IMG/VR virus record: IMGVR_UViG_3300005941_000003
Location: 124,001-188,000 of that record
Length of the DNA: 64,000 nt
Direction: 5' to 3' (one strand)
This document shows positions 32,016-49,235 of the stretch, in pieces. The notes beneath the pieces were generated by a model. That model was not told the origin of the DNA. It saw only the letters and a program-made list of their open reading frames with translations, and searched no databases. The translations under genes and the position numbers were made by a program. Numbering within the stretch: the stretch's first letter is position 1; every line of letters starts with the position of its first letter.

Positions 32016-33096
32016 AATACACGCTGGTTCCCGCCCGACAATAATTTTAGATGGTGACAAGTTAATAGTCTCATTCGATACATATGATCGCGAACATACC
32101 TGCTTAGTTTTACAAGATTTTATAGAAAACAATCGTTCAGACCATTTATATCTCACGATGTTTAATGTCACTGAGGCCTTTCTCAATATGGATTCCGGTT
32201 TATATTTTAAACGTATAAATGATATAGCTTCAAAGGTAAAATATTCGGAGTTCATCAATTGCAATCTCATGGTAGGAGAACATGCAAGCTATTCATCGAA
32301 GTTTCTGTTAACCGACCCGCTCGTAATTGATAAGTTCACCTGTTATCCATATACATTTCTAAATCGAACAATCAACAACATTACCAGTACATTATGTAAA
32401 TCTCCAGATTATCATAATATCCGACCTTCTAAACATGCAATATGTTACAATGGTAATCCTATACTACCACGTGCAATGATACTGGATGGATTAGCAGAAA
32501 TCGGTATGTTGAAAAATTTACATTACAGTTGGATGTTACGCACACGTATAACTGAAAATCTGTTTCAACTATACGATTATTATGTTAAAAATTTCGATTA
32601 TAAGACAAAAGTAGTCCTAGATCATGATGACATATCGATTGGTATAAATCAAGATACCGTTGATGATTTTTTATATTTCAATGACAGTTTAATAGAGATA
32701 GGTGCCGAAACTAATCCAGAGCCGTATCAGTTGATCTACACCGAGAAAACTTGGAAGCCAATATTGTTAGGTAAATTTTTTCTTCTTTATGCACATGCAT
32801 GGTATTACGAAAACTTAGAAAAAATGGGGTTTCAACTATATGATGAAGTTTTTGATTATTCATTTGATCAAGAGTTTGATACTAATAAACGTCTTAGTAT
32901 GTATATCGATGAAGTTAAAAGATTATTATCTATACCTATAGAAGAATTACAACAACAGCTAATTGACATTAATCATAAAGTAATATATAATAAAGAACTT
33001 GCCATCAAACTTAACACCAACACAAACGAATTAGTAAGTAAATATTCGTTTATGTCCCCAAACGTTATGAGGAACTCATTGCATGACACTGAATAG
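31981..33096 (+). CDS. Glycosyltransferase-like protein, 'TEKT' family (#1)
   Basis: C-terminal ET...YTEKTWKPILLGKFF...L.KMGFQLYDEVFDYSFD motif shared with 37426 and 57965. The start could be 31993. Confidence 0.5.
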   Translation: MIKTMNIISSTKIHAGSRPTIILDGDKLIVSFDTYDREHTCLVLQDFIENNRSDHLYLTMFNVTEAFLNMDSGLYFKRINDIASKVKYSEFINCNLMVGEHASYSSKFLLTDPLVIDKFTCYPYTFLNRTINNITSTLCKSPDYHNIRPSKHAICYNGNPILPRAMILDGLAEIGMLKNLHYSWMLRTRITENLFQLYDYYVKNFDYKTKVVLDHDDISIGINQDTVDDFLYFNDSLIEIGAETNPEPYQLIYTEKTWKPILLGKFFLLYAHAWYYENLEKMGFQLYDEVFDYSFDQEFDTNKRLSMYIDEVKRLLSIPIEELQQQLIDINHKVIYNKELAIKLNTNTNELVSKYSFMSPNVMRNSLHDTE

Positions 33097-34501
33097 AAAA
33101 ATACCAATTTGGAAAAACGACGGTAGTTGTTCTTCTGATAGTCCAAATAAGACATTTTGTATGGCACCGTGGACTCATACATATATATCTCCACAGGGTG
33201 AGCGGCGCATGTGCTGTGCGAGCAGGGAACAACACCAATTCCAAAAGCAATACATAGACGCCTCGAATGATGAAAAGTATGGTGAAGTCACAGAAAGTAA
33301 AACTGCTGCCGATGATTTTAATCCTCTCACTCTTGAGGAACATTGGAACTCTCCATACATGAGAGACATACGTAAGAAACTGATGGCGGGTGAAACTATA
33401 CCACAATGTGATGTATGCAATGATGATATTTTGAGCCTTAGTTCGTATCGCAAATGGTTCACTGGCGTACTGTTCAAAGACAAGATACAACAGGCATTTG
33501 ATAGTACCGATGATGATGGGTACACTACCATGCCAACAATATCTTTTGATTATCGTTTTTCTAATTTATGCAACTTTAAGTGTCGCATGTGCGGTGAACT
33601 TCTTAGTTCAAGCTGGGAAGCAGAAAAGAAAAAACACAATATGTGGAGTCCAGAGAATCAACCATTCATGCAGCATGATGTGAAAAGAAAAATGAATGCA
33701 TTTCAAGTTAATGTTGTTGAACCTGAATTCAGAGCCGCAGTTGATGCCGGTATAGTAGAAGAAATTTATTGGGTCGGCGGCGAACCGTTAATGTATGATA
33801 TACATTGGGAAACTCTGGAAAAAATGGTACAGAATGGATCTGCAAAGAATTGCTATTTGCGATACAATTCCAACTTGTCTCGCGTAACGTACAAAGATAA
33901 AAATTTATATGACTATCTTCCACAATTTAAAAACTGGATGATGTGCGCAAGTATCGACGGTACAGGTAAGATTGTAGAATTCATTCGTAGTGGAATTGTA
34001 TGGAAAGAATGGTTAGAAAACTTTAAGCAAGGTGTTGAACTTCCTAATGGCAAAGAACGTATGATACTAGACCTGACAATTACTGGTCCTGGTATGTTTG
34101 CACTAAAAGATTTGTTTGATCTATCACAAGAACTTGGAGTTCGGATAGAAACAAAGATGATGTTTGCCTTTCACCCAGATATTGTATTTTCTCCGTTTGC
34201 TTGGCCAAAAGAAATACTACATCGTATTATAGATGAAAATCTCGCATACATGGAACCACGTGCAACTAATCGTCAGATGACACTTATAAATACGCTTAAA
34301 GAAATGAAAAAGCGACAAACACATATGGAGCAATGGCCAGATACATGGCTTCAAGAAAGTAGAAACGGTAGAAGTTTTCAAGCACATCTTAGTGAAATAC
34401 GCCAAGATAAACTTACAGGCATACCAACACTTGAAGAAATATATAAAGAACATGACACCGAACTTTATGAATGGTGGATGCGATATAACGAACATAACTG
34501 A
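33083..34501 (+). CDS. Radical SAM protein with N-terminal Twitch-type domain (#3)
   Basis: FCMAPW...MCC...CDVC; CNFKCRMC; VGGEPL; ASIDG. Confidence 0.92.
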   Translation: MTLNRKIPIWKNDGSCSSDSPNKTFCMAPWTHTYISPQGERRMCCASREQHQFQKQYIDASNDEKYGEVTESKTAADDFNPLTLEEHWNSPYMRDIRKKLMAGETIPQCDVCNDDILSLSSYRKWFTGVLFKDKIQQAFDSTDDDGYTTMPTISFDYRFSNLCNFKCRMCGELLSSSWEAEKKKHNMWSPENQPFMQHDVKRKMNAFQVNVVEPEFRAAVDAGIVEEIYWVGGEPLMYDIHWETLEKMVQNGSAKNCYLRYNSNLSRVTYKDKNLYDYLPQFKNWMMCASIDGTGKIVEFIRSGIVWKEWLENFKQGVELPNGKERMILDLTITGPGMFALKDLFDLSQELGVRIETKMMFAFHPDIVFSPFAWPKEILHRIIDENLAYMEPRATNRQMTLINTLKEMKKRQTHMEQWPDTWLQESRNGRSFQAHLSEIRQDKLTGIPTLEEIYKEHDTELYEWWMRYNEHN

Positions 34502-34509
34502 GGTTGTAA

Positions 34510-35361
34510 ATGGAAGAATGGCGTAAAAATATAGGAGCGGATGATGAATATTTTTTAAATTCATGTCCGGTTGACACTTATGATAACCCAAATTTGGGAT
34601 CGGAAAATAGAAGTATACGTGTTCGCTGGTATCCATCCGATAGCAAAGACAACTATATAGAATCTGGAAATGCATATACAATCGATAGTGTAGATTATGA
34701 TTTAAATAAACATGGGTTTCGGTGTGACGAGTTCGATGACATACGTGATAGTAAAAATAAAAAACTGATTGTGTTCGGATGCAGTAATACTTTTGGTATA
34801 GGCTTACCTGAACATCATATTTGGCCATATGAAGTAAAAAGATTACTTGAAAAAAAATACAACGAGAAGATCGATTTAATAAATCTTGCTATGCCAGGTA
34901 CTGGTTCGGACGATACAGTGCGCGTAATTAGTATGTTGGGTGACAGCTTTCATCCTAATTTTGTATGCTGCTTTACCCCACCTGTGTTTAGAAAAACTTA
35001 TACTGACCATAGCGGTAAGATATTTAATTATTTGCTATCTAATCAATATAACAAAAATTATCATGACTCGGATTGGAAACGAGTAAATTCTATCGGAGAA
35101 GCAATGGTGGATATATCTCCGCAATCTTTTTATTACGGTCAATATGTTGCAGAAAGTTTAGTTCGCACCTATGCAAAATTAAATAATGCCACCCATAAAA
35201 TAATAACAACTGCACATTACTTGGATGATATGATTGCTACATATGACATAGATAAAAATGAAGGCCCATGGAAATCTAAAGCAAGAGATTCTATGCACTA
35301 CGGTAGACACTTTCATAAGATGTTGGCAATTAAATTTATAGAAGGTTTGTTTAATGAGTGA
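34510..35361 (+). CDS. SGNH/GDSL-like hydrolase or acyltransferase (#1)
   Basis: NKHGFR, VFGCSNTFG, INLAMPG and DSMHYG (DxxH) motifs. Confidence 0.7.
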   Translation: MEEWRKNIGADDEYFLNSCPVDTYDNPNLGSENRSIRVRWYPSDSKDNYIESGNAYTIDSVDYDLNKHGFRCDEFDDIRDSKNKKLIVFGCSNTFGIGLPEHHIWPYEVKRLLEKKYNEKIDLINLAMPGTGSDDTVRVISMLGDSFHPNFVCCFTPPVFRKTYTDHSGKIFNYLLSNQYNKNYHDSDWKRVNSIGEAMVDISPQSFYYGQYVAESLVRTYAKLNNATHKIITTAHYLDDMIATYDIDKNEGPWKSKARDSMHYGRHFHKMLAIKFIEGLFNE

Positions 35362-36598
35362 TACATTTTGCGTTTTACCATGGTTGCATTTAGCATCGCA
35401 CCCGCATGGGGGTATAACATTATGTTGCAATGCAAATCATGAATATGGTGTTTCTAGGTCTAGGAACAAAACATCAAACTCTAATAACAACCCTCGCAGC
35501 ACTGATGGTGATCAATTCCTTGATTTAAAAAATCAGAGCATACAAGAAATAATGAACGGTGATACCTTTAAAGAAGTTAGACTGCAAATGCTAGAGGGTA
35601 AAAAACCATACGCATGTTTACGTTGCTACAAAGAAGAATCTATTGGTATTGTAAGCAAGCGTGTGAAAGAAAACAGAGAATATCCACATTTTACAATTGA
35701 ACAGGCAAAATCATTAACTGCACCAGACGGTACGATTGCCAATATAAATTTAGAATTTGTTGAACTTAGACTAGGTAACATTTGTAATGTTAAATGTAGA
35801 ACTTGCAACCCATGGAGTAGTTCAAAATGGATATCAGACTATCAAAAGTTAAGAGAAGAATATCCTGATCTGGGAGAATTCAATAAAGATCACAACCAGT
35901 TTGATTGGCCAGAACAAGAGAAATTTTGGGAAGATTTGTTTGAGCATACAAAAGATGCAAAGGTATTTTACATCAATGGCGGTGAACCTACGTTGATTAA
36001 AGAACACTTCAAGTTCTTGCAACGGATGATCGATGCCGGTAGAACTAACGTATGTCTACGTTATAACATTAATATGACAAACATGAATGAAGAAATCATA
36101 GAAATATGGAAACAGTTTGATGACATAGATATAGGTTTCAGCATCGATGATCTTAGTGACAGAAACGAATATATTAGAAATCCAACTAAATGGGAAGATG
36201 TTATGTCAACTGTTGATATGTTACTTCCACACAGATGTGATATACAATTCAGCATAACACAAACTGTTAGTTGGATGAACTTCCCATATCTTGGTGAGTT
36301 CTATGAATGGGCAAGTGGCCTAGGTATATATGTACACCATAATATGGTTAACGATCCGAAAATATTCTCTCCTAATGTACTACCGTTAGAATATCGTAAA
36401 GATGTAATAAAAAGACTGTCAAACATATTACCTAATGACAAAATAAATGCATTAAGGCAGTTTGAACAAAACGAAACGGATATAGAACTTTTACGCAGAG
36501 CAATAAACTACACCGATTCTTTAGACAGAATGCGCAGAGAAAAGTTCGATGTGGTGTTTCCAGAATTATCGTTTTTGAGAAAATTATATGAAAAATGA
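35354..36598 (+). CDS. Radical SAM protein with N-terminal Twitch-type domain (#4)
   Basis: FCVLPW...LCC...CLRC; CNVKCRTC; NGGEPT. Confidence 0.92.
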   Translation: MSDTFCVLPWLHLASHPHGGITLCCNANHEYGVSRSRNKTSNSNNNPRSTDGDQFLDLKNQSIQEIMNGDTFKEVRLQMLEGKKPYACLRCYKEESIGIVSKRVKENREYPHFTIEQAKSLTAPDGTIANINLEFVELRLGNICNVKCRTCNPWSSSKWISDYQKLREEYPDLGEFNKDHNQFDWPEQEKFWEDLFEHTKDAKVFYINGGEPTLIKEHFKFLQRMIDAGRTNVCLRYNINMTNMNEEIIEIWKQFDDIDIGFSIDDLSDRNEYIRNPTKWEDVMSTVDMLLPHRCDIQFSITQTVSWMNFPYLGEFYEWASGLGIYVHHNMVNDPKIFSPNVLPLEYRKDVIKRLSNILPNDKINALRQFEQNETDIELLRRAINYTDSLDRMRREKFDVVFPELSFLRKLYEK

Positions 36599-37457
36599 AT
36601 TTAGTTTTCTATCTGGTCCGGGCGGCAGGCGAGACATAGAACATAGTGAGAATCCAAATAGACATTGGTACAAAATAGATGACTTCTATAACAATACCTT
36701 ACAGACTAGATCGCAAATCACGAATTTAGATGAATTATATAATAAAAAGATTATAATCGTTGTTGGAGATAGTTTTACATTTGGAGATGGCGTTTATTAC
36801 ATTGATACATATGCCCACCTTTTGCATACTGATTTCTTCAATAAAGAAGACTATGTAGTAATAAATGTAGGTGTACCGGGTATATCGAATGACCGAATAA
36901 TACAAATAACACAAAATTGGGTTAATGAATTTTCGTCCCAAATCGAATGTATAATTGTGGGAATGTCATTCTTATCTAGAAGATCATACTTTTTTGATAA
37001 CGAATATACGCGTGACCATAATAACGACATCTACACAATGGAAAAATCTGATGTGAATACATACAACTTTAATCCTTCTACGACAGTTCCGACAACTAGA
37101 AACGGTTTACCTATTCGTGATAAGTACAATGCGTTTCTGGAACTAAACACTCGTATAAATGATTACAGAGAGTTTGAAAAAAATTTATTGCTATTAAAGT
37201 ATATTTCAATAGTATACAACATAAAAATATATTGGTGGGGCTGGTTGAATTTAATGTTCACGAAACACGACAGAGAGTTTCTAATAAGTACATTTGATTT
37301 TAACACAATGAGATACATAAACGTAGATGATATAACCGACCAGTTAGAGACCATATCATCGGATGATCGACACTGGAATCCGCGCGGTCATCGCCGCGTA
37401 GCAGATTACATAATAAAGTTTTTAAATGATGACTACTGTAAACAATTCACTCTTTAG
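36588..37457 (+). CDS. SGNH/GDSL-like hydrolase or acyltransferase (#2)
   Basis: VVGDSFTFGDG, INVGVPGISN and DDRHWN..GH motifs. Confidence 0.75.
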   Translation: MKNEFSFLSGPGGRRDIEHSENPNRHWYKIDDFYNNTLQTRSQITNLDELYNKKIIIVVGDSFTFGDGVYYIDTYAHLLHTDFFNKEDYVVINVGVPGISNDRIIQITQNWVNEFSSQIECIIVGMSFLSRRSYFFDNEYTRDHNNDIYTMEKSDVNTYNFNPSTTVPTTRNGLPIRDKYNAFLELNTRINDYREFEKNLLLLKYISIVYNIKIYWWGWLNLMFTKHDREFLISTFDFNTMRYINVDDITDQLETISSDDRHWNPRGHRRVADYIIKFLNDDYCKQFTL

Positions 37458-38613
37458 AGGTACCGGAGATTCACCATGGTGGTATTACATGTCAAAGGTG
37501 TACAATTTGAATTTGGAATTCTCTGACGTTTCTCCTCTGTGTATCTATGAACCGAATATATCACAAGAGTTGGGCAATCACGGTATAAGCATTGTAAAAG
37601 ACGGCAGCGTAGTAGATATACTACCTGACAATAGTAAAGTCATAATTAGCACGGTGCAGGAACCTATATCTGCCTTAGGTAAATTCAAATATCATGAAAA
37701 CGTAGATATACCTAATGTCTTGGTATCTAATGGCGCAAATACATCTAACGTGTGTTTTGTATCAGGTGACTTTTTCGTCAACGAATTCAACAATACTGAT
37801 ATGAAAACGTTTTTTGTTCCTGGGTGGAATCATTTATTCTGGGACGAAAAGGCAGAACCCATCGATTTACAAACTCGTTCATATGACCATTTGTTTTTAA
37901 GTTTCAATCGTATACACAAGCCGCACAGAATGTATTTTATGTGCAGACTACATGAATTAAAACTCTTAGAACGTAACTTAGTTAGTTGTGCTGATATTAT
38001 CGATGGTGAAACATTTGAGCAACATATGACTTGGATATACAATGACAAGAACGAATACCTTAACATATATGATCCAAACAATCTAATAGATATAGAAAAG
38101 TTGAAAAGTATTGCATCTGATATACAAACATCATTGCCGTATGTACTAGATGTATCGAACTTTCAAGAAAATGGATGTTTTGAAAGCGATACATTTAATA
38201 CTAGTTTACCATTCTATCAGAATAGCTTCATGAGTGTGATCACTGAAAGCAATGCTGTAGGTCCCGGATGCTATATATCGGAGGCTATATTTAGACCATT
38301 TGTTTTCATGCAGCCATTTTTAACAGTTGCGCAACCTAGAACTTTACAAGTGTTGCGAGAATGGGGGTTTGATGTATTTGATGACTTATTTGACAATAGC
38401 TATGACTTAGAACCCGATATGTTTAAACGTACAGAGATGGTACTAGAACAAATACAAAAGTTTTCACAACTTACACCAGAACAACTTAAAAAAATAACAC
38501 TTGATTTAGAACCAAGATTGTTGTATAATCATAACAGATATTACAGTAATGAATTCAAACAAATTAGTGCAAGTTATTTTAAAGATGTTTTGGCGTGGCT
38601 AGATGAAAAGTAA
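37426..38613 (+). CDS. Glycosyltransferase-like protein, 'TEKT' family (#2)
   Basis: FLSFNR..KPHR and VITES...ISEAIFRP....QPF...LREWGFDVFDDLFDNSYD. Confidence 0.5.
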   Translation: MMTTVNNSLFRGTGDSPWWYYMSKVYNLNLEFSDVSPLCIYEPNISQELGNHGISIVKDGSVVDILPDNSKVIISTVQEPISALGKFKYHENVDIPNVLVSNGANTSNVCFVSGDFFVNEFNNTDMKTFFVPGWNHLFWDEKAEPIDLQTRSYDHLFLSFNRIHKPHRMYFMCRLHELKLLERNLVSCADIIDGETFEQHMTWIYNDKNEYLNIYDPNNLIDIEKLKSIASDIQTSLPYVLDVSNFQENGCFESDTFNTSLPFYQNSFMSVITESNAVGPGCYISEAIFRPFVFMQPFLTVAQPRTLQVLREWGFDVFDDLFDNSYDLEPDMFKRTEMVLEQIQKFSQLTPEQLKKITLDLEPRLLYNHNRYYSNEFKQISASYFKDVLAWLDEK

Positions 38614-38989
38614 AAAACTATCACCTGACGTATTCGAGGACCATCGCGGAGTTATTCTTAGCTTTCCGCTTGATGTGAATGATTCACCTGTGGTCGAATA
38701 CAACCTAATGATAACATTAAAAGGCGATGAGCGCGGTTATCACTATCATCCACATTTTGATGAGTACATGATAGTTGTTGATGGGGAATGCTTATTCAAA
38801 GAATTTTCATCAGATGGTGATCACAAAGAAATGATAATGCGTGAAGGTGACAGCATTAAAATACCGACCGGCACTGCACATACATTTACTGCATTAACTG
38901 ATTTTAAATTTGTTAGTCTACTAACTAAGCGTTGGGATGACAGCGTTCCGCCAATTGTTAAAGTTAACAATAACGGAGAACCGTTATGA
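38603..38989 (+). CDS. Cupin-fold protein (NDP-sugar isomerase/epimerase-like, FdtA/RmlC-like)
   Basis: FEDHRG, RGYHYHP...E and IP.G.AH motifs. Confidence 0.75.
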   Translation: MKSKKLSPDVFEDHRGVILSFPLDVNDSPVVEYNLMITLKGDERGYHYHPHFDEYMIVVDGECLFKEFSSDGDHKEMIMREGDSIKIPTGTAHTFTALTDFKFVSLLTKRWDDSVPPIVKVNNNGEPL

Positions 38990-39885
38990 TCAAGTATATG
39001 GATTTCATCGTTGGTATAACATTTAAGAATGGATATGAGGTATTCATACGTCCATACGATACCGAACTTAATAGAACGTTCATAGAAAAATCAAATTTTA
39101 AAAAATTAGATAAACCATTATATTATCAGCTAGACACAACATATGTTGGGTTTTCGGATAGACAAATATCTTTGATAGAGAACAAAGAAGAAATAAAAAA
39201 AGAAAGTATAGAACGAATCATAAAATCATTTAATGATCTAAATATGGAGTTACATCCTGCACTAGTTAGGGGCGAACTTACATTAGAAGATTGTAATGAA
39301 ATACATCGTATCTTTACTACAAACTTTTTAGAGTTAAGACACAACCGACCTCCATCTGAAATAACAGTTTTGAATGAAACATTACAAGGTATTAATCACG
39401 GCGTTCATGATTATGAAAGTGTGTTACATAGTGAAAATTACATGGAATGCGACGAACTGCCTAGAACAATACTTGTGGGATATGAAATATGGGATCAAAT
39501 GGGAGAGTTTGCGTACAACGTACCCAATACATATGATCGTACAGAACTAGCTGATTTATACGACCATGCTGATGTTTTTTACTGGGATGATTGCAGGCTT
39601 GGTAGAAACTTTGCAACTGCTTGGTATATGGGCGATGATCCTATGGCTTGGGACGTTGCTGATATAGATGCAATTGTTCCTATTTTTAAACTAGGTAACA
39701 ATAAGATAAAAAGACTTTATGGTGATACAAAATTTTTAGATTGGCTAGCAAAGGGTAACTATGATTTTACTGTACCATTCAAAGATTTACCTTTTGGAAA
39801 AATCATAAATCCAATTGAATTCACTAATGAAACTGTTACTAATATGTACAGACCTACAGAGATAAAAATATATGAATCCATTTGA
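38986..39885 (+). CDS. Hypothetical protein
   Basis: ATGA-coupled 299-aa ORF; no motif I can assign. Confidence 0.65.
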   Translation: MIKYMDFIVGITFKNGYEVFIRPYDTELNRTFIEKSNFKKLDKPLYYQLDTTYVGFSDRQISLIENKEEIKKESIERIIKSFNDLNMELHPALVRGELTLEDCNEIHRIFTTNFLELRHNRPPSEITVLNETLQGINHGVHDYESVLHSENYMECDELPRTILVGYEIWDQMGEFAYNVPNTYDRTELADLYDHADVFYWDDCRLGRNFATAWYMGDDPMAWDVADIDAIVPIFKLGNNKIKRLYGDTKFLDWLAKGNYDFTVPFKDLPFGKIINPIEFTNETVTNMYRPTEIKIYESI

Positions 39886-40480
39886 ATACGTACATGAGTT
39901 TGAACGACAGGTAGCAGAATACGCAGGAGCACCTTATGGTATAGCAACCGACTGTTGCAGTCATGCTATATTCCTAAGTGCAATGTATTACAAACTCAAA
40001 CATGGTACTCCGGAAAAAGTCACACTTCCTACTCACACATATGTGAGTGCAGCAATGCAATTGCGCCATGCAGGTTACAATATCACATTCGAAGATTTTG
40101 AATGGGAAGGTGCGTACACTATAGAACCTACAAATATTGTTGATGCTGCCCCACGCTTTACTAAAGGTATGTATGTTCCCGGAACATACCACTGTGTGAG
40201 TTTTCAATATAAGAAAATTCTAAGTACAATTAAAGGCGGTATGATACTAACTGACGACGAAGAATTTTACAAATGGGCGCAACGTGCAACACATGATGGA
40301 AGAGACATGTCGTTGCCATACGAACAAGATACAATAACGATGCTTGGATATCATATGTTTATGACACCAGAGACCGCATTAATGGGACTCGAAAAGATGA
40401 AAACTATCCCAGACTTCAACAAAGATATTGCTGGTAGTTATACATACCCAGATATTAGCTATACAAATGGACTAAATTAA
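39872..40480 (+). CDS. Short DegT/DnrJ/EryC1-family PLP aminotransferase
   Basis: FERQVAEY.GA.Y..A, VDAA and SFQYKK.L..IKGGMILTDD motifs; only 202 aa. Confidence 0.8.
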   Translation: MNPFEYVHEFERQVAEYAGAPYGIATDCCSHAIFLSAMYYKLKHGTPEKVTLPTHTYVSAAMQLRHAGYNITFEDFEWEGAYTIEPTNIVDAAPRFTKGMYVPGTYHCVSFQYKKILSTIKGGMILTDDEEFYKWAQRATHDGRDMSLPYEQDTITMLGYHMFMTPETALMGLEKMKTIPDFNKDIAGSYTYPDISYTNGLN

Positions 40481-41673
40481 TGGCACACATAAAAGAAATA
40501 ACAGAATGTCGCAGTTGCGGAAGCAGCGAGTTTACAACAGTATTCGATATGGGCGACTTGAAAATCAATGCGTTTATGGCAGAACCGAATACAGATATTG
40601 GTACAGCACCGCTAACTTTGTTACATTGTTTTCATTGTGACCTAGTTCAACTGTCACATACAGTACGTGAAGAAGACCTTTATAAAAATTATTGGTACCT
40701 AAGCAGACTTAATAAGAAGATTGTAGACAATCTACAAAGTATCACAGTTGCAGCACAGAAACATGTGTCACTTTCAGATGGTGATATCGTTTTAGATATT
40801 GGTGCCAATGATGGTACTCTGTTGAGTTTTTATTCAGAGAACGTGATCAAAGTAGGATGTGATCCTGCGCAAAATATCAAGAGCGAACTTGAGAAAAACT
40901 GCGACATAACTATAAGTGATTTCTTTACTAAAGAAACTTATCGAAGCGCAGTAGGTAGCAAGAATGTAAAAGTTGTAACTACTATCGCTATGTTCTATGA
41001 CCTAGACAATCCAAATAAATTTGTTCAAGATATCAAGAGCATCCTTGCAGATGACGGTCTGTGGATTTGTCAGCTTATGACTGCTAGACCAATGCTTGAT
41101 ACAAACGATATCGGAAACGTAATCCATGAACATATCGAATACTATTCTTATAAAGCACTTGTGAATCTACTTGAACGTAATGGTCTAGAAATTTATGATC
41201 TAGTAGAAAACGATATTAATGGTGGTAGTTATCAGTTGTATATTCGTCATCTATCTCAAGGTTCTATGGAATTCGAAGAAGACTGTTCACAAGAACGTTA
41301 TGTTGAATGGCAGCGTAACATGGAAATCAACCGTGAGAAAACTATGAACTTCTTGCGAAGCGAAGTTGCAAATGGTAAAAAAGTGTATATCATGGGCGCA
41401 AGTACAAAAGGTAACACTATCATGCAGTACTACGGACTTGATGGCGATATCATTTCTGGCGCGGCAGAAATACACCCAGATAAGATAGGAAAATATCTTG
41501 TTGGTAGTAGTATACCAATTGTCCACGAAGATGAAGCAAAAGAAAAAGCAGATTACTTCTTGGTATTCCCATTCCACTTTAAAGACATATTTGTAAATAA
41601 GATTTTAAAGGATTGGATTACAGAGGGCGGCAAGCTAGTATTTTGTACACCAACATTTGAGGTAATCGGGTAA
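40480..41673 (+). CDS. NDP-hexose C-methyltransferase (TcaB9/NovU/EryBIII-like)
   Basis: Zn site CRSC...CFHC.LVQL, LDIGANDG.LL, HEHIEYYS and GASTKGNT. Confidence 0.9.
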   Translation: MAHIKEITECRSCGSSEFTTVFDMGDLKINAFMAEPNTDIGTAPLTLLHCFHCDLVQLSHTVREEDLYKNYWYLSRLNKKIVDNLQSITVAAQKHVSLSDGDIVLDIGANDGTLLSFYSENVIKVGCDPAQNIKSELEKNCDITISDFFTKETYRSAVGSKNVKVVTTIAMFYDLDNPNKFVQDIKSILADDGLWICQLMTARPMLDTNDIGNVIHEHIEYYSYKALVNLLERNGLEIYDLVENDINGGSYQLYIRHLSQGSMEFEEDCSQERYVEWQRNMEINREKTMNFLRSEVANGKKVYIMGASTKGNTIMQYYGLDGDIISGAAEIHPDKIGKYLVGSSIPIVHEDEAKEKADYFLVFPFHFKDIFVNKILKDWITEGGKLVFCTPTFEVIG

Positions 41674-42428
41674 TGTTAAGTAAAGAACCACATAGCGAGT
41701 TAAACAATCTATTTCGTCGCAATTGGTTGCGCGACGATCTAGAAACCATGTATACTATATCACCTATATCAACGATGAGTGCGTCTCGTATGCAAGCAGT
41801 CATGGATGCAATTCGATATGTAAAAGCAAAGGACATACCGGGAGACATCGTAGAATGTGGTGTATTCATGGGCGGTAACATTGCCCTCGCACTTGCAGAA
41901 ATGTACAATTTGGATTTAGATAGAAAGTTTTGGGCATATGATACATTCGAAGGTGTACCCAGAAAAGAATTGATCGACACTGATAGAGAGATTGAAATAC
42001 ATAGCTCAGGTGCAGGAGAGAGTGTGGAACGTTGGTATAACGAAGAAGACCAATGGTGCTACTGTCCCAAAGATGGGGTAATAGAAAATGTTGCCAATGT
42101 CATTCCAAAACTTATCCCAGACTTATACGATGCAAATCGTATGATCGACAAGAAAGTAAACTTTGTTGAAGGTTCAGTGTTAGATACTATTCCTAATATA
42201 CTACCAGAAAAAATATCGTTCATACGTTTAGATATGGACATTGCCGTACCAACTAAACATGCACTTGAACATTTGTGGGATTTAGTATCAATAGGTGGGG
42301 TAATGCACATCGATGATTACAATATGTTTGGCGGAGTTCATGAAGCAGTAGATGAATTCTTTAAAGATAAATTTGTTTACATTCAAGAGATTGATTATGC
42401 TGCATCTGCTATTGTGAGGCTTTCGTAA
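41673..42428 (+). CDS. TylF/MycF/NovP-family O-methyltransferase
   Basis: GDIVECGV..GG, YDTFEG, IRLDMD and GG...IDDY motifs. Confidence 0.9.
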   Translation: MLSKEPHSELNNLFRRNWLRDDLETMYTISPISTMSASRMQAVMDAIRYVKAKDIPGDIVECGVFMGGNIALALAEMYNLDLDRKFWAYDTFEGVPRKELIDTDREIEIHSSGAGESVERWYNEEDQWCYCPKDGVIENVANVIPKLIPDLYDANRMIDKKVNFVEGSVLDTIPNILPEKISFIRLDMDIAVPTKHALEHLWDLVSIGGVMHIDDYNMFGGVHEAVDEFFKDKFVYIQEIDYAASAIVRLS

Positions 42429-42955
42429 TGGTATTAAAAACAAGTGATAGTATGATTGGTAAAACTGCCAGATACATTGGTAATATGGAAGAGGGCGAAG
42501 TATGCCTAGTGATGATCATATGTAATCATTGTCCGTATGTTCTATTCAGAATGCCACAGATATCACAATTAGTTAAAGACTACAAAGATTCGGTTCGTAT
42601 AGTTGCAGTCAACAGTAACGATGCTTCACCAACAACAGAAGATTCACACCCAGAAGATGCCCCAGAGTTTATGCCAGAGTTCATAGAGGAATGGGATTTG
42701 CAATGTGATTATATATTTGATGAAGATCAAAGTATTGCAAAAGACTATGGTGCCGTATGTACACCAGAATTCTACGTTGTAGATAGAGAAGGTATTATAG
42801 TATATCACGGCGAATTAGACCCATCGCATATATCTAACAGATTAATGCCAACTGGAAGTAGTCTTCGTCACGCAATTGACTTGGCTCTAGTAAATAAAAC
42901 TATCGATTGGGACCCTAACCCAAGTTTTGGATGTAGTGTAAAGTGGAAAAACTAA
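42428..42955 (+). CDS. Thioredoxin-family / peroxiredoxin-like redoxin
   Basis: ICNHCPYV, VNSND, DEDQ.IAK.YGA.CTPEF and GCSVKWK motifs. Confidence 0.85.
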   Translation: MVLKTSDSMIGKTARYIGNMEEGEVCLVMIICNHCPYVLFRMPQISQLVKDYKDSVRIVAVNSNDASPTTEDSHPEDAPEFMPEFIEEWDLQCDYIFDEDQSIAKDYGAVCTPEFYVVDREGIIVYHGELDPSHISNRLMPTGSSLRHAIDLALVNKTIDWDPNPSFGCSVKWKN

Positions 42956-43750
42956 ATGAAGATAGGTATAGTAGGAAGTGAAGGTGTAGTAGGTCGCGCA
43001 TGTACTGCAGGCTTTGCGCGGCTTGGATACAATGTTATCAAGCATGATATTAGTTTAATGACTAAACTACTTTCTGTGTTAGAAGCAGAGATTGTTTTTA
43101 TATGTGTGCCTACACCAAGCGATTCTACAGGGAAGTGCGACACCAGTATTGTAGAAAGCGTTGTTGCAGAATTGTATAGTTTAAACTATACAGGGGTTGT
43201 AGCTATTAAATCTACAGTAGAACCGGGTACTACGCAACGATTGATAGAACAGTATGATGACCGTATTGTATTTGTTCCTGAGTTTTTAAAAGAACGAAGT
43301 GCGGAATATGACTTCGTGTTCGACCATAGACTTCTACTTGTCGGAACAGACAATGTAAATTACTACTACCTAGTACAGCGTTCACATGGTAACCTACCAA
43401 AAGATATTATGCGCGTGTCTCCGACAGAAGCAGAATTGATGAAGTATTATCACAATACATTCAATGCAACACGTATTGTGTTCGCCAATGTTATGTATGA
43501 GATTGCAGAAAAAATGGGGGTGTCATATGACAAGATCAAGGAAGCGTTCTTGAAAAACAATGACATGCCAGATGAATATCTTGATGTAAAACCAGAACTG
43601 CGAGGTTATGGTGGAGCATGTCTACCAAAAGATGTTCTCGCAATGCAACGCGCTTGTGAACAACTTGGATTACCTCACCACCTATTTGAAGCAATAGATA
43701 AAGAGAACAGACTGTTTGAAACGACAGTATTTGATGGGATGAGAAAATGA
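42956..43750 (+). CDS. UDP-glucose/GDP-mannose dehydrogenase family protein, short form
   Basis: FICVPTP, IKSTVEPGTT, PEFLKE, EAELMKY..N and GYGGACLPKD motifs; lacks the C-terminal domain. Confidence 0.85.
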   Translation: MKIGIVGSEGVVGRACTAGFARLGYNVIKHDISLMTKLLSVLEAEIVFICVPTPSDSTGKCDTSIVESVVAELYSLNYTGVVAIKSTVEPGTTQRLIEQYDDRIVFVPEFLKERSAEYDFVFDHRLLLVGTDNVNYYYLVQRSHGNLPKDIMRVSPTEAELMKYYHNTFNATRIVFANVMYEIAEKMGVSYDKIKEAFLKNNDMPDEYLDVKPELRGYGGACLPKDVLAMQRACEQLGLPHHLFEAIDKENRLFETTVFDGMRK

Positions 43751-44637
43751 AAATACTTGTTACAGGCGCAGCGGGATTTATAGGCAATGCGATAGCAAAA
43801 GAACTTAAAGGATCGGACCATGAAGTTATTTTAACTGATATACTCATGCCAGATGAATTACATGGTCATGCTTATACATACGCAGATTTAACAAATCAAG
43901 ATGCAGTTAATAACTTACCGGATGTTGACGTTGTATATCACATGTGTGCATATAATAATACGGCACACTTCTATTCTAAACCAATGAGTGTCATTGATTC
44001 TACGCTTACCCCTACAATATACTTACTGCAACGTTATAAGTCAATAAAAAAATTCATATACGCAAGTAGCAGTGAGATATATGCAGGTGCTATACAACTC
44101 GGTATATCCGATATACCAACACCAGAAGTAAATGTAGGGATAATTAATGGCATTGACAACCCACGTTGGAGTTATGCAGGTAGTAAACTCATGGGAGAAA
44201 TACTAGTACACGCCGCGCACGTCGAGCATGGGCTAAATTATGCAATCATTCGTTATCACAACGTATACGGTAAACGCCAGAAAGCACACTTTATACCAGA
44301 GTATGCAGAGCGTATACAAAACGATGACCGCACATTATACGGCGCGGATCAAACACGTGCATTCTTGTACATAGATGATGCTGCGAAATTGACAGCCATG
44401 GTTGCAGACGTATTAGAAAATGATACTATACATATTGGTAACCCAAAAGAGATTACTATAAAACTGGTGGCGGCGATGATACGTGATATTCTTTTAGTAC
44501 ATACCAAACCAGAATACAAAGATGCACCTGAAGGTAGTGTAGATAGAAGATGTGCAGATATTTCTAAACTATTAGAACTATTCCCAGATTTTAAATTCAC
44601 AGGGCTAGATGCGGGTCTTAGAAAAACTCTGCTATAA
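43747..44637 (+). CDS. NAD-dependent epimerase/dehydratase (extended SDR)
   Basis: VTGAAGFIG, ASSSEIY, YAGSK (YxxxK) and RYHNVYG motifs. Confidence 0.9.
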   Translation: MKILVTGAAGFIGNAIAKELKGSDHEVILTDILMPDELHGHAYTYADLTNQDAVNNLPDVDVVYHMCAYNNTAHFYSKPMSVIDSTLTPTIYLLQRYKSIKKFIYASSSEIYAGAIQLGISDIPTPEVNVGIINGIDNPRWSYAGSKLMGEILVHAAHVEHGLNYAIIRYHNVYGKRQKAHFIPEYAERIQNDDRTLYGADQTRAFLYIDDAAKLTAMVADVLENDTIHIGNPKEITIKLVAAMIRDILLVHTKPEYKDAPEGSVDRRCADISKLLELFPDFKFTGLDAGLRKTLL

Positions 44638-44640
44638 ATA
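44633..44640 (+). promoter_or_regulatory. Late promoter TATAAATA, 5 nt before ATG 44646 (leaderless)
   Basis: TATAAATA-cgaac-ATG; no SD. Confidence 0.7.
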
Positions 44641-44645
44641 CGAAC

Positions 44646-45773
44646 ATGAAATGCCCACTAGTTACCAATCATCTAGAAATAAACTCAAGCGGCGAATTCA
44701 AACCGTGTTGTATTAGTTCGAAGCGATTTGCTATTGACAATAAGATAGCAAATGCAGATACCCATACCATAGATGATATAATACAACACAGTGATCGTAA
44801 CGAGTGGATTAAAAATTTTGATGCAAACTATGAAACTGATTGTAGACAATGCTATGAAGTAGAACGTAGTGGTGGTGAAAGTAAGCGCATCAGAGAACTT
44901 AGAGATTGGCGAACTAACTATCATTTCAAATCTGATACATTGCAATCTCTTGATTTGAAGATGGGTAATACCTGTAATCTCGCTTGTGCAATATGCGCAC
45001 CAGATAGCAGCAGTAAATGGGCATCAATATACAAACAACTTGGTTACGATACTGGTATACGACTACAACGTTGGCCAGAACGTGATGAATTTTGGGAACA
45101 ACTCAACCAACACGCCCAAAACATACAAAAGATAGAACTTGCTGGCGGCGAACCGTTTATGATTAAGAAGCAAGAAATACTAATCAACTTCTTAATAGAA
45201 CGAGACTTAGCAAAGAATATAGATATAACTTGGTTTACAAACTGTACTATATGGCCAGAGAATATTGTGAAGCACTTTGATAAGTTCAAACAAGTTCGTA
45301 TAATGCTTAGTATCGACAATACGGGTGAACAATTCGAATACATACGATACCCTGCAAAATGGAATGAAGCATATGATATATTCTTGAAGTTCAAGGAGTT
45401 ACATAGTCGCAAGATAGTAAATCTAGGCATATCACATTCTATAGGATTACTAAATGTATGGAGATTACCAGAGTTTCACGCGTGGTGCAGACAGCACGAA
45501 GTATCTGTATTCAACAATCTTATAATGAATCCACTAAGTGCAAAAGACTTACCGAAAGAGTTTAAATTGCGAGTAGCAGAAAAGTTGAGTAAGTGTAGCG
45601 ACCCCTCATACCAACATAACCCAGTTGTTGGAGAAAACAATTGGCTCATACAGTTTATGATGGGAGACAGTGATAACAATCTACAGCATCTCACTGAAAA
45701 AGTTATACCATCTCGTCCGACGATAGATATATATGAGGCGTTTCCTGAATTGAAAGGAATGTTAAATGTATGA
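44646..45773 (+). CDS. Radical SAM protein with N-terminal Twitch-type domain (#5)
   Basis: KCPL...PCC...CRQC; CNLACAIC; AGGEPF. Confidence 0.92.
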   Translation: MKCPLVTNHLEINSSGEFKPCCISSKRFAIDNKIANADTHTIDDIIQHSDRNEWIKNFDANYETDCRQCYEVERSGGESKRIRELRDWRTNYHFKSDTLQSLDLKMGNTCNLACAICAPDSSSKWASIYKQLGYDTGIRLQRWPERDEFWEQLNQHAQNIQKIELAGGEPFMIKKQEILINFLIERDLAKNIDITWFTNCTIWPENIVKHFDKFKQVRIMLSIDNTGEQFEYIRYPAKWNEAYDIFLKFKELHSRKIVNLGISHSIGLLNVWRLPEFHAWCRQHEVSVFNNLIMNPLSAKDLPKEFKLRVAEKLSKCSDPSYQHNPVVGENNWLIQFMMGDSDNNLQHLTEKVIPSRPTIDIYEAFPELKGMLNV

Positions 45774-46560
45774 TACTCTTTGGCTAGGTTGTTCACATAG
45801 TTCTGGTAGTTATTGTAAAGATACTGGAGAACTTATAGACCAATCTCATAGTATTCCATCCGTTCTTGCGACAAAACTAAATCAACGTTGGAAAAGCATT
45901 TCATTTCCAGGTGATGGGGTGATGAAATATGCAGAAGCAGTGAAGTTGCTTGATGAAAACAAGTTATTATCCAATTTTAGAAATATAATCATACAGCGCA
46001 CTTATGAGCCTCGTATGACGTTTTTTAATGATAGCGATTATATTTACGATAGAATACTAGAATACGTAAACGACCCAAATCGATTTGAAACTATTATATC
46101 AGTAAGACCACCAACCGAACGTACTTTTTCTCTTTTCGCACATCAGAACTACGATCAGTATCATTCTAAATTTGCAGGTAAAGAAATAGAATTAATAGAT
46201 ATGTTTGAAAATATATCTCACAGTGTTGATCCCAGAGAAAGCACCACAGAGACTACACAGTATCCAAGTCTTTGGGTTGATGTGCATTATGATTATATAA
46301 AATATACTGCGGATAAAAACAATTGCAAATTGTATATGTTTGATTACGTGGGCAGTTTTAGAAACCAAAATCGTAGATGGAAAATTAACAAACCATTTAA
46401 ACGCACACTTATTAATGGTGATCAAGATTTTGTTTTCCACCATCTTACAGAACAAAATAGATTAGATTTGTTAGCGTCTGCACAGCACCCTACACACGGT
46501 GCAGTTGATTTGCTGGTAGACATATTATATAAAGAGTTGAATGATGAAGAATATAAATGA
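45766..46560 (+). CDS. SGNH-like protein (#3)
   Basis: WLGCSHSSG, SFPGDG and C-terminal AQHPT motifs. Confidence 0.55.
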   Translation: MYDTLWLGCSHSSGSYCKDTGELIDQSHSIPSVLATKLNQRWKSISFPGDGVMKYAEAVKLLDENKLLSNFRNIIIQRTYEPRMTFFNDSDYIYDRILEYVNDPNRFETIISVRPPTERTFSLFAHQNYDQYHSKFAGKEIELIDMFENISHSVDPRESTTETTQYPSLWVDVHYDYIKYTADKNNCKLYMFDYVGSFRNQNRRWKINKPFKRTLINGDQDFVFHHLTEQNRLDLLASAQHPTHGAVDLLVDILYKELNDEEYK

Positions 46561-47734: not shown

Positions 47735-47803
47735 CGCCGCGCGGGGCGAAGTTCGAGCGGCACCAAGATAATCCCGGAACAAGCCATCGGAGATGGCTTG
47801 GTT
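47735..47803. other. GC-rich intergenic element with hairpins
   Basis: gccgc/gcggc (47736-47761) and the perfect caagccatc-gga-gatggcttg hairpin (47780-47800), followed by aaaatttttt. Confidence 0.6.
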
Positions 47804-47823
47804 AGGAAAATTTTTTGGAGCAT

Positions 47824-47843
47824 TAAGTGCGCACTTATAAATA
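47824..47843 (+). promoter_or_regulatory. 14-bp palindrome overlapping a late promoter TATAAATA that lies 5 nt before ATG 47849
   Basis: taagtgcgcactta (47824-37); TATAAATA (47836-43)-tatct-ATG. Confidence 0.7.
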
Positions 47844-47848
47844 TATCT

Positions 47849-49108: not shown

Positions 49109-49175
49109 GGGTAAGTTGAGGCATAGTGTTACGGAAAACCAAAAAAATGCTTGCGGGATGGCCTCAGATTCGCGG

Positions 49176-49204
49176 AGTATAGCACCTGAAAAATAAAAGT
49201 TCAA
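49176..49204 (-). promoter_or_regulatory. Sigma70-like promoter pointing antisense into rSAM #7
   Basis: Minus strand TTGAAC, 17 nt, TATACT with extended -10 TG; no substantial minus-strand ORF follows. Confidence 0.45.
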
Positions 49205-49235
49205 CTCTTTTTTTACTAGAAGTGGAAAAAATATT

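What the first reader, a model, noticed from the sequence alone, without database searches (positions are those of the whole stretch)
33083..46560. Recurring rSAM-then-SGNH gene pairs; most SGNH copies have G-C-S instead of G-D-S
Seen: three rSAMs (33083, 35354, 44646) are each followed directly by an SGNH-like gene. Four of the five SGNH-like proteins have GCS at the nucleophile block with a C-terminal (D)xxH retained. Established: SGNH domains also act as glycan O-acyltransferases (PatB, AlgJ/X, OatA). Inference: a two-enzyme module in which radical modification and acyl transfer or removal act on the same sugar.
Basis: partly seen in the sequence, partly recalled or inferred. Interest (0 to 1): 0.6.

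Follow-up and report, generated by a model that had tools for sequence, protein, structure and literature searches.

The report
Phage radical-SAM genes beside odd esterases
A giant uncultured phage carries a long sugar-tailoring gene island packed with radical-SAM enzymes and small esterase-like (SGNH) proteins of an undescribed Gly-Cys-Ser subfamily; the two families do travel together in phages and bacteria, but they are not fixed one-to-one pairs.

Summary
At 33083, 35354 and 44646, radical-SAM (rSAM) genes are each followed within -11 to +8 nt by an SGNH-like gene. Four of the five SGNH-like genes in the window read G-C-S in block I.

- **The Cys:** it replaces the non-catalytic Asp of G-D-S. 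The nucleophile Ser is kept.
- **The rSAMs:** they are NCBIfam N_Twi_rSAM (N-terminal twitch domain). The 246-kb jumbo-phage record has 19-20 rSAM genes.
- **The SGNH proteins:** they belong to a large family that Pfam, NCBIfam and PHROGs do not capture. Its hallmark is GCSxTxG.
- **Adjacency inside rSAM-dense islands:** not above random order (own island P 0.07-0.19; four islands pooled P 0.13). In the next related island, two of the three rSAM orthologues have no SGNH after them.
- **Association at family level:** strong.
  - 17 of 38 viral SGNH clusters have an N_Twi rSAM within 5 kb, and 9 have one directly upstream (2.9 expected).
  - 25 of 78 bacterial rSAM loci hold the SGNH family.
  - In a terminase-linked cassette, a second rSAM never occurs without the SGNH (20 versus 0) and co-diverges with it.

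Most likely these are co-travelling tailoring enzymes of a phage glycan pathway. The substrate is unproven.

The parts
33083..34501 (+). N_Twi radical SAM enzyme (472 aa): N-terminal twitch/SPASM-like Cys domain, then the CX3CX2C core
   Evidence: NF033640 at 320.6 bits against a cut-off of 170. Pfam places SPASM at residues 26-113 and Radical_SAM at 158-315. Its 77%-identical orthologue in G001 has no SGNH after it.
34510..35361 (+). SGNH-fold protein (283 aa) with block I G-C-S-N-T-F-G and block V D260-x-x-H263
   Evidence: G90, C91, S92, T94, D260 and H263 are invariant across 14 homologues down to 24% identity. AF2 pLDDT 81, with only SGNH folds hit. The profile aligns GCS to the GDS of 9otv.
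35354..36598 (+). N_Twi radical SAM enzyme (414 aa)
   Evidence: NF033640 at 367.8 bits. Its 49-51%-identical orthologue in G001/L024 is also flanked by SGNH genes.
36588..37457 (+). SGNH-fold protein (289 aa), the canonical G-D-S copy, with D-D-R-H
   Evidence: Pfam Lipase_GDSL E 3.4e-4, below the cut-off. hhalign against the 34510 family gives 95.8% over 210 columns. The orthologue in L272 keeps GDS.
44646..45773 (+). N_Twi radical SAM enzyme (375 aa)
   Evidence: NF033640 at 247.3 bits. The 54-63%-identical orthologues in L270/L271 are followed by the 45766 orthologue. The 50%-identical orthologue in G001 is not.
45766..46560 (+). Divergent SGNH-like protein (264 aa); G-C-S at residues 8-10, a block II-like F-P-G-D-G, and a C-terminal H-P-T
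   Evidence: These motifs are invariant in 4 homologues. The low-confidence model (pLDDT 63) hits only SGNH hydrolases at E about 1e-3. The profile match to the 34510 family is weak.
46541..47734 (+). N_Twi radical SAM enzyme directly downstream of the SGNH-like gene, so that gene has an rSAM on both sides
   Evidence: NF033640 at 337 bits. The order 44646-45766-46541 is kept in L270 and L271.
56052..56717 (+). SGNH-like protein (221 aa), G-C-S, D-A-H; it follows an aminotransferase, not an rSAM
   Evidence: Motifs. hhalign gives 88% over blocks I-II. It is absent at the syntenic place in L271.
63292..63999 (+). SGNH-like protein (241 aa; ends at 64017, beyond the window), G-C-S; no rSAM neighbour
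   Evidence: Motif. Family HMM E 2.8e-28.
28034..31385 (+). Two long N_Twi rSAM paralogues (605 and 519 aa) that open the island
   Evidence: The orthologues in G001 are 47% and 68% identical.
47798..50441 (+). Two further N_Twi rSAM paralogues (436 and 401 aa)
   Evidence: NF033640 at 252 and 384 bits.
37426..44637 (+). Sugar-nucleotide tailoring block: g170-family protein, cupin, short DegT, NDP-hexose C-methyltransferase, TylF O-methyltransferase, AhpC/TSA-like protein, short UDP-Glc dehydrogenase, epimerase/dehydratase
   Evidence: Pfam. The block has the same order and gene lengths in L271 and L272.
54067..54981 (+). Canonical rSAM with a C-terminal SPASM domain (304 aa)
   Evidence: Pfam places Radical_SAM at 9-170 and SPASM at 224-287.
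59945..61144 (-). N_Twi rSAM paralogue on the minus strand

Best explanation
**Setting.** The window lies in a Rak2/CBB/SCTP-2-like giant myovirus. Directly after the baseplate and fibre genes comes a roughly 55-kb, tightly packed operon for making and tailoring unusual sugars.

**The two gene families.**
- One is an expanded set of radical-SAM enzymes whose auxiliary-cluster (twitch) domain sits at the N-terminus (N_Twi_rSAM). It has 13 paralogues in the record and 9 in the window.
- The other is a fast-evolving, previously unnamed SGNH-fold subfamily with block I G-C-S-x-T-x-G. It has 8 copies in the record and 5 in the window.

[quoted passage not shown] The Cys is a lineage-typical replacement of the structural Asp.

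**How the families relate.** They are recruited together as tailoring enzymes of the same pathway. The rSAM does radical chemistry on a sugar or glycan intermediate. The SGNH adds or removes an acyl group on that product or on a neighbouring position. The link is a loose, re-shufflable association, not a fixed heterodimer. Only some sub-lineages, such as rSAM-B/SGNH next to the terminase gene, behave as an inseparable two-gene unit.

**Shown:** gene order, family membership, fold, motif conservation, co-occurrence statistics.
**Inferred:** catalytic activity, a sugar substrate, a shared substrate.
For: - **Family and fold:**
- **Sugar context:** Pfam hits in the island. The g170 family has GT10-like leads and a fusion to an epimerase in other phages. 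In SGNH-centred viral loci, 13-14 of 78 carry epimerase and g170-family homologues. Vibrio phage K566 has 4 N_Twi rSAMs beside a protein that looks GT8-like by eye (no family scan was run on it).
- **Viral co-occurrence:** 338 viral loci encode relatives. 17 of 38 clusters at 60% identity have an N_Twi rSAM within 5 kb. 9 of 38 have one directly upstream against 2.9 expected (P about 5e-4).
- **Bacterial co-occurrence:** 25 of 78 bacterial N_Twi loci hold the SGNH family. 20 of 29 such genes are adjacent to an rSAM, against 13.5 expected.
- **Cultured phage:** RsoM2USA has the order SGNH-rSAM-SGNH-SGNH, and all three SGNH copies are GCS.
- **Terminase cassette:** of 54 distinct loci, 20 have rSAM-B plus SGNH, 16 have SGNH only, 18 have neither, and 0 have rSAM-B only. 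Mirror-tree r(rSAM-B, SGNH) is 0.48 (Mantel p 2e-4), against 0.23 with rSAM-A.
- **Close relatives keep the window's order:** R-S-R-S and R-S-R.
- **GCS is the family norm:** 144 of the top 150 representatives.
Against: - In rSAM-dense islands, adjacency is no more than random order gives.
- In island G001, the 77% and 50% orthologues of the 33083 and 44646 rSAMs lack a downstream SGNH.
- About half of the viral SGNH clusters have no N_Twi rSAM within 5 kb. rSAM arrays also exist without the SGNH.
- Bacterial neighbours are enriched in PhyH, WelO5 and TauD dioxygenases rather than glycosyltransferases, so the substrate need not be a glycan.
- No conserved block III Asn can be pointed to in the 34510 family, so the oxyanion hole would be atypical.
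- No experiment exists for either family.
Confidence: 0.45

Rival explanations
1. The neighbours are coincidental. rSAM and SGNH genes are independent tailoring or accessory genes that share hypervariable islands, and rSAM genes are so dense there (a third of the genes) that rSAM-then-SGNH junctions arise by chance. There is no shared substrate.
For: - Permutation tests: P 0.19 and 0.07 in the own island; 0.13 pooled over four islands; 0.40 without the window's island.
- Orthologous rSAMs lose the SGNH neighbour in G001.
- All junctions in the operon are equally tight.
- The SGNH diverges two to three times faster than the flanking rSAMs.
Against: - The families co-occur where rSAM genes are sparse: the terminase cassette, bacterial loci and RsoM2USA.
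- rSAM-B is never found without the SGNH and co-diverges with it.
Confidence: 0.3
2. A peptide or protein modification system. The twitch/SPASM-type rSAMs modify a peptide or a phage structural protein, and the SGNH-like protein acts as a peptidase, as the SGNH-like CgnD does in crocagin (RiPP) maturation.
For: - The best structural match of the 34510 model is CgnD (8a2n, Z 13.3, 202 aligned residues including the N-terminal extension).
- CgnD removes a leader peptide (PMC10070186).
- SPASM/twitch rSAMs are often peptide maturases (hits).
- Bacterial neighbours include PhyH-type dioxygenases, as in the crocagin cluster.
Against: - There is no room for precursor genes: the largest intergenic gaps in the island core (28034-61968) are 63 and 127 nt.
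- Strong sugar-nucleotide context.
- The Z score for CgnD is only about 1 above ordinary esterases.
Confidence: 0.08
3. A maturase-target pair. The rSAM post-translationally converts the invariant Cys next to the nucleophile Ser of its SGNH neighbour, as anaerobic sulfatase-maturing enzymes convert Cys or Ser to formylglycine, creating a new catalytic residue.
For: - The Cys is invariant across the family.
- SPASM/twitch rSAMs include protein maturases encoded next to their targets (established for anSME/AtsB; own knowledge).
- Recurrent adjacency.
Against: - G-D-S copies are paired with rSAMs too: 36588 and the G001/L024 copy.
- SGNH relatives in bacterial loci have D as often as C.
- Half of the GCS clusters have no rSAM nearby.
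- The rSAM orthologue at 77% identity works without an SGNH neighbour.
- The Cys sits at the position of a non-catalytic Asp.
Confidence: 0.05
4. The SGNH proteins are receptor-destroying or host-surface deacetylases used at infection, as in SGNH domains of phage tailspikes, and merely lie near the fibre genes.
For: - The island follows the baseplate and fibre module.
- A phage tail protein with an SGNH domain (Moo19 Gp82, 9d81) is among the structural matches.
- Fast divergence is typical of host-interaction proteins.
Against: - These are small stand-alone proteins without a virion-attachment domain or signal peptide.
- They are embedded in biosynthetic operons between rSAM genes.
- The same family sits next to the terminase gene or in bacterial chromosomes.
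Confidence: 0.05

Closest known systems
SGNH/GDSL hydrolase superfamily (TesA, CE2/CE3 acetyl-xylan esterases, PatB)
   Same: Same alpha/beta/alpha fold (Z 10-12.5). Block I has the Ser nucleophile in a G-x-S-x-T context, as in CE3. Block II has the N-x-x-x-x-G Gly. Block V has D-x-x-H.
   Different: - Cys replaces the Asp of G-D-S in about 95% of the closest family members.
- There is no recognisable block III Asn.
- A conserved N-terminal extension of about 80 aa is present (W-x-P-S-D-S, G-F-R-C-D-E-F).
- Scores are below every Pfam, NCBIfam and PHROG cut-off.
- The proteins are cytoplasmic and phage-borne.
NCBIfam NF033640 N_Twi_rSAM (twitch domain-containing radical SAM protein)
   Same: Full-length matches of 190-424 bits against a cut-off of 170. 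The N-terminal motif is CX12GX4C...CX2C, followed by CX3CX2C.
   Different: I found no characterised member and no paper on the family. Here the family is expanded to 13 paralogues in one phage record.
Peptidoglycan and alginate O-acetyltransferases PatB, OatA, AlgX/AlgJ
   Same: SGNH-fold proteins that act on glycans. PatB is among the Foldseek hits. The 56052 copy has D-x-H, as AlgJ/X do.
   Different: Those enzymes are extracytoplasmic and work with an AT3/MBOAT acyl-donor partner. No such partner, signal peptide or membrane segment is seen here.
Crocagin hydrolase CgnD (PDB 8a2n)
   Same: Best structural match of the 34510 model (Z 13.3, 202 residues). It is an SGNH-like protein in a tailoring cluster with an Fe/2OG dioxygenase.
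   Different: CgnD is a slow leader peptidase of a RiPP. No precursor peptide gene is present here, and sequence identity is 12%.
Twitch-domain rSAM sugar enzymes such as BtrN (aminoglycoside pathway)
   Same: An rSAM with one auxiliary cluster, in a cluster with aminotransferases, methyltransferases and a carbamoyltransferase. This is from my own knowledge of BtrN.
   Different: The twitch domain is N-terminal rather than C-terminal. There is no detectable specific similarity. The chemistry is untested.

Membership tests
SGNH hydrolase superfamily | Three-layer alpha/beta/alpha SGNH fold | tested here: met
   For 34510: AF2 pLDDT 81, 62 Foldseek hits at E<=1e-3 with every listed hit an SGNH hydrolase, and VIA Z 10-13. 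For 45766: low-confidence model, SGNH hits only, E about 1e-3.
SGNH hydrolase superfamily | Block I Ser nucleophile (G-D-S-L) | tested here: met
   The Ser is invariant (S92). The profile aligns GCS to the GDS of 9otv at E 2.4e-4. The Asp is replaced by Cys.
SGNH hydrolase superfamily | [quoted passage not shown] | tested here: inconclusive
   N125 and G130 are nearly invariant (block II). No conserved Asn is found for block III; P157-P158-x-x-R161 is conserved at that strand end instead.
SGNH hydrolase superfamily | Block V D-x-x-H | tested here: met
   D260 and H263 are invariant in the 34510 family. 36588 has D-D-R-H. 45766 and 63292 have the His only, and 56052 has D-x-H.
Pfam Lipase_GDSL (PF00657) and other curated SGNH families | Score above the curated gathering threshold | tested here: not met
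   Only 36588 hits, at 21.3 bits against a cut-off of 23.6. The other copies and 10 family representatives have no hit or a sub-threshold hit. There are no NCBIfam or PHROG hits.
NF033640 N_Twi_rSAM | Score above the cut-off, with the N-terminal twitch Cys motif and the CX3CX2C core | tested here: met
   190.8-423.5 bits against 170 for 13 ORFs of the record. C6, G19, C24, C88, C91, C144, C148 and C151 are invariant.
PatB/OatA/AlgX-type glycan O-acyltransferase systems | Extracytoplasmic SGNH domain working with a membrane acyl-donor partner (AT3/MBOAT, PatA/AlgI) | tested here: not met
   No AT3/MBOAT family appears in any Pfam scan of the island. The N-termini read show no hydrophobic signal segment (by inspection; no predictor was run).
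RiPP rSAM maturase plus leader peptidase | A precursor peptide gene in the cluster | tested here: not met
   Junctions across the island core are -35 to +29 nt, except two gaps of 63 and 127 nt. Small overlapping ORFs were not searched systematically.
anSME-like maturase/target pair | The target residue is required wherever the maturase is encoded beside the target | tested here: not met
   G-D-S copies are paired with rSAMs. SGNH relatives in bacterial loci have D 8 and C 5. 21 of 38 GCS clusters have no rSAM nearby.
   It fails in rSAM-dense islands (P 0.13 and 0.40; orthologues unpaired in G001). It holds for rSAM-B/SGNH in the terminase cassette (20 versus 0; r 0.48) and in close relatives.

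The most novel reading that the evidence does not exclude
The N-terminal-twitch rSAM is a protein maturase of its SGNH neighbour. It would radical-modify the invariant Cys beside the nucleophile Ser, for example to formylglycine or a thioether cross-link. That would make G-C-S the precursor of a new post-translationally generated active site in a family of thousands of phage and bacterial proteins.
Probability: 0.05. Interest if true: 0.85.

Novelty: new variant of a known kind. Interest (0 to 1): 0.55.

Why it matters
**Two uncharacterised families.** Both turn out to be large.
- N_Twi rSAM: 398 bacterial stretches found; arrays of 9-20 genes in several giant phages.
- The G-C-S-x-T-x-G SGNH subfamily: 854 clusters at 50% identity with E<=1e-30, and 13,001 with E<=1e-3. 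No curated family model reaches its cut-off on it.

**What their association offers.** It gives a concrete handle on a large unexplored block of phage-encoded radical chemistry. This chemistry probably builds hyper-modified sugars next to the tail-fibre genes, which would bear on host recognition or on evasion of host defence.

**An experimental entry point.** The cultured phage RsoM2USA carries a minimal SGNH-rSAM-SGNH-SGNH cluster.

**The caveat.** The specific claim of fixed rSAM/SGNH pairs is weaker than it looks, because rSAM genes are so dense in these islands that adjacency is expected by chance.

Tried and rejected
- **Complex prediction** of the 33083 and 34510 products: score 0.00, no verdict. 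It is not evidence either way.
- **Rosetta-stone search:** none of the 150 best family representatives is an rSAM-SGNH fusion. The long ones are tandem SGNH-SGNH, or carry an unassigned 380-aa N-terminus.
- **Broad rSAM alignment (A2):** too divergent for a collection scan. It was replaced by A3 and A4.
- **hhalign of 45766** against the 34510 family: probability 3%.
- **GenBank phages:** no nucleotide match for the region. No protein match for the 34510 product. Only three records hold distant N_Twi rSAMs.
- **Literature:** nothing on NF033640 or N-terminal twitch/SPASM domains. No paper that I found links rSAM with SGNH in phages.
- **Solved structures:** no close rSAM relative.
- **Pfam at E<=1** on the unknown paralogue families (31981/37426/57965; 50438/53112): nothing usable. 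The Atlas gave only leads: GT10-like at 0.79, and DUF7796.
- **An idea withdrawn:** I considered that the 56052 copy is a pair split by an inserted aminotransferase. The G001 rSAM I had in mind is the reciprocal best hit of another gene, so I dropped it.
- **Not used:** the reads tools, since expression was not the question.

Full report
**What the window is.** The window is bases 124001-188000 of a 245,963-bp IMG/VR virus record that CheckV estimates to be 67% complete. A 342-kb contig matches the two tested stretches with 100%-identical protein matches. The first 28 kb of the window encode baseplate hub, baseplate wedge and a 2,912-aa virion protein (PHROG hits). The wedge protein is 34-40% identical to those of Salicola phage SCTP-2, Pectobacterium CBB, Salmonella 7t3 and Agrobacterium Atu_ph07, so this is a giant myovirus of that broad group. 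From 28034 onward, an almost gap-free plus-strand operon runs for about 55 kb, beyond the window end. Junctions are -35 to +29 nt with few exceptions.

**Check of the observation.** The three rSAM ORFs at 33083, 35354 and 44646 are each followed by a 264-289-aa ORF.
- Pfam shows an unusual order in the rSAMs: SPASM first, then Radical_SAM.
- NCBIfam places them, and six more in the window, in NF033640 N_Twi_rSAM at 238-384 bits against a cut-off of 170.
- The record holds 19-20 rSAM-domain ORFs, and 13 of them are N_Twi above the cut-off.
- A motif scan finds five SGNH-like ORFs in the window: 34510 GCS, 36588 GDS, 45766 GCS, 56052 GCS and 63292 GCS. It finds three more elsewhere in the record (two GDS, one GCS).

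**Are they SGNH proteins, and what is the Cys?**
- The 34510 product has 13 word-search homologues. In the 14-row alignment (down to 24% identity), G90, C91, S92, T94, G96, G98, P100, A258, R259, D260, H263 and G265 are invariant.
- Its AlphaFold model (pLDDT 81) matches SGNH hydrolases in every listed Foldseek hit (TesA, acetyl-xylan esterases, PatB). VIA Z is 10-12.5. CgnD of the crocagin pathway comes first at Z 13.3.
- A profile search of PDB sequences aligns the family's G-C-S-x-T-x-G-x-G-L-P with the G-D-S-L-T-A-G-F-G-L-P of an esterase at E 2.4e-4.
- The Cys therefore replaces the Asp of G-D-S, and the nucleophile Ser is kept. Variants at that position are already known: GxSxT in CE3 and GTSYS in AlgX/J (PMC9487903).
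- No conserved block III Asn is visible.
- The 36588 product is the same family (95.8%). The 56052 product matches over blocks I-II (88%).
- The 45766 product is only weakly linked by profile. However, a low-confidence model again hits only SGNH folds, and its G-C-S, F-P-G-D-G and H-P-T motifs are invariant in its four homologues.

**Size of the SGNH family.** An exhaustive profile search finds 13,001 clusters at 50% identity with E<=1e-3, and 854 with E<=1e-30. Of the best 150, 144 have G-C-S-x-T-x-G. Pfam, NCBIfam and PHROGs do not capture the family.

**Is the adjacency more than chance?** Inside rSAM-rich islands it is not.
- In the record's island, 17 of 52 genes are rSAMs. Three of five SGNH genes following an rSAM has P 0.19 (any rSAM) or 0.07 (N_Twi) under random gene order.
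- Three further rSAM-rich islands were read: G001, a 66-kb fragment with 17 N_Twi matches and a backbone syntenic to this island; G002, a 608-kb phage with 10; and G004, a 364-kb phage with 9.
- Pooled over the four islands, 7 rSAM-then-SGNH junctions are seen against 4.7 expected (P 0.13). Without the window's own island, P is 0.40.
- Reciprocal best hits between this island and G001 show that the 33083 rSAM (77% identity) and the 44646 rSAM (50%) have orthologues with no SGNH after them. The order 34510-then-35354, which is SGNH-then-rSAM, is the one that is kept.
- Two of the three SGNH genes in the window have an rSAM on both sides, so the direction of the 'pair' is not defined by the window.
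- Closer relatives do keep rSAM-SGNH-rSAM-SGNH and rSAM-SGNH-rSAM.
- In those relatives the SGNH genes diverge far faster than their neighbours: 59% against 90%, 45% against 89%, and 37% against 83% identity.

**Where rSAM genes are sparse, the link is clear.**
- A pattern scan found 338 viral loci encoding relatives of the 34510 product.
- Among 38 informative clusters at 60% identity, 17 have an N_Twi rSAM within 5 kb. Nine have one directly upstream, against 2.9 expected from local gene content (P about 5e-4). Several of the nine belong to one clade.
- That clade is a hotspot next to the T4-type terminase gene of freshwater jumbo phages. Its order is SNase-like gene, rSAM-A, an optional gene of about 190 aa, an optional rSAM-B plus SGNH, then TerL.
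- A search centred on rSAM-A, which is independent of the SGNH, gave 54 distinct loci. Twenty have rSAM-B plus SGNH, 16 have SGNH only, 18 have neither, and none has rSAM-B alone. The rSAM-A tree implies 5 to 11 changes of state.
- The independent-pairs sign test on that tree cannot reach significance, with a median p of 0.25.
- Pairwise distances of rSAM-B and SGNH correlate at r 0.48 (Mantel p 2e-4; partial r 0.44 given rSAM-A). SGNH against rSAM-A gives r 0.23.
- In bacterial MAGs (Bdellovibrionota, Bacteroidota, Elusimicrobiota and others), N_Twi rSAMs again form tandem arrays. Of 78 loci, 25 hold the SGNH family within 6 kb, and 20 of the 29 SGNH genes touch an rSAM (13.5 expected).
- There the block I residue is D as often as C.
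- The cultured Ralstonia phage RsoM2USA has the order SGNH-rSAM-SGNH-SGNH. All three SGNH copies are G-C-S and all genes are annotated hypothetical.
- Vibrio phage K566 has four N_Twi rSAMs and no SGNH.

**Substrate.**
- The island encodes a cupin, DegT-type and class I/II aminotransferases, an NDP-hexose C-methyltransferase, a TylF O-methyltransferase, two UDP-glucose dehydrogenase-like proteins, an epimerase/dehydratase, two nucleotidyltransferases and a carbamoyltransferase.
- The unassigned 31981/37426/57965 family has only viral relatives. It has a weak GT10 lead and a structural relative fused to an epimerase.
- Homologues of that family and of the epimerase recur in 13-14 of the 78 SGNH-centred viral loci.
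- This favours a sugar or glycan, but bacterial neighbours are mainly Fe/2OG dioxygenases.
- The CgnD match keeps a peptide reading alive, although there is no room for a precursor gene.
- No AT3/MBOAT partner or signal peptide supports the PatB/OatA analogy.

**Verdict.** The two families are functionally associated tailoring enzymes, with one sub-lineage behaving as an inseparable unit. The window's own 'pairs' are not statistically or evolutionarily fixed, and a shared sugar substrate remains an inference. The G-C-S motif marks a large unnamed SGNH subfamily rather than a change of nucleophile. A maturase role of the rSAM on that Cys is not excluded but is unlikely (about 5%). The complex prediction gave no verdict.

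Noticed in passing
whole record G000 (window 28034-61144, and L102:7391-19018): One phage record has 19-20 radical-SAM ORFs, 13 of them N-terminal-twitch paralogues. Similar expansions occur in other huge phages: 17 in a 66-kb fragment, 10 in a 608-kb genome and 9 in a 364-kb genome.
   Followed up: partly
L014:3112-10830, L018:2684-8302 and about 75 further viral loci (L112-L191): A variable hotspot lies directly upstream of the T4-type terminase large subunit in freshwater jumbo phages. It runs SNase-like gene, a highly conserved rSAM-A (72-100% identity), then optional genes including a ~190-aa protein with an H-x-D...H motif, rSAM-B, the SGNH, a g170-family protein and an epimerase. The window's own TerL (record 72293-73891, minus strand) has no such cassette.
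   Followed up: partly
L102:8523-10813 and L102:12776-15256 (record 196523-198813 and 200776-203256): A second recurring pair: N_Twi rSAM followed by a PP-loop (S-G-G-A-D-S) protein with a C-terminal Cys cluster, QueC-like by eye and with no Pfam hit. In G001 the order of the orthologues is reversed.
   Followed up: no
window 39872-40480 and 42956-43750: A DegT-type aminotransferase of only 202 aa and a UDP-glucose dehydrogenase-like protein of only 264 aa look truncated. They have the same lengths in the relatives L271 and L272, so they are probably genuine short forms, not pseudogenes.
   Followed up: partly
window 42428-42955: An AhpC/TSA (peroxiredoxin/redoxin) family protein sits inside the sugar-tailoring block and is conserved in L271 and L272. 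It could be a reductant partner for the rSAM enzymes.
   Followed up: no
window 50438-51376 (-), 53112-54050 (-), and L102:17-919: A three-member paralogue family of about 300 aa. Its nearest Atlas clusters are viral (Uroviricota and Nucleocytoviricota), some carrying DUF7796. Two copies are inverted relative to the operon.
   Followed up: partly
L274:6126-10134 (Ralstonia phage RsoM2USA, MG752970.1 about 125.0-129.0 kb): A cultured jumbo phage carries the cluster SGNH(GCS)-N_Twi rSAM-SGNH(GCS)-SGNH(GCS), all annotated as hypothetical proteins. It is a possible experimental model.
   Followed up: partly
proteins P0019, P0043, P0055, P0097: Some members of the GCS-SGNH family are tandem SGNH-SGNH fusion proteins of 457-601 aa. 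P0148 (623 aa) has an unassigned 380-aa N-terminal part.
   Followed up: partly
window 12929-21667: A 2,912-aa virion structural protein (PHROG 10938) lies directly upstream of the fibre-like genes and the tailoring island. G001 has a 3,651-aa counterpart. It is a candidate carrier of whatever the island makes.
   Followed up: no
record 240552-243357 (minus strand), outside the window: A lone N_Twi rSAM is followed by a 515-aa rSAM with an extra N-terminal domain, and a histidine-box desaturase-like ORF lies nearby (244291-245031).
   Followed up: no
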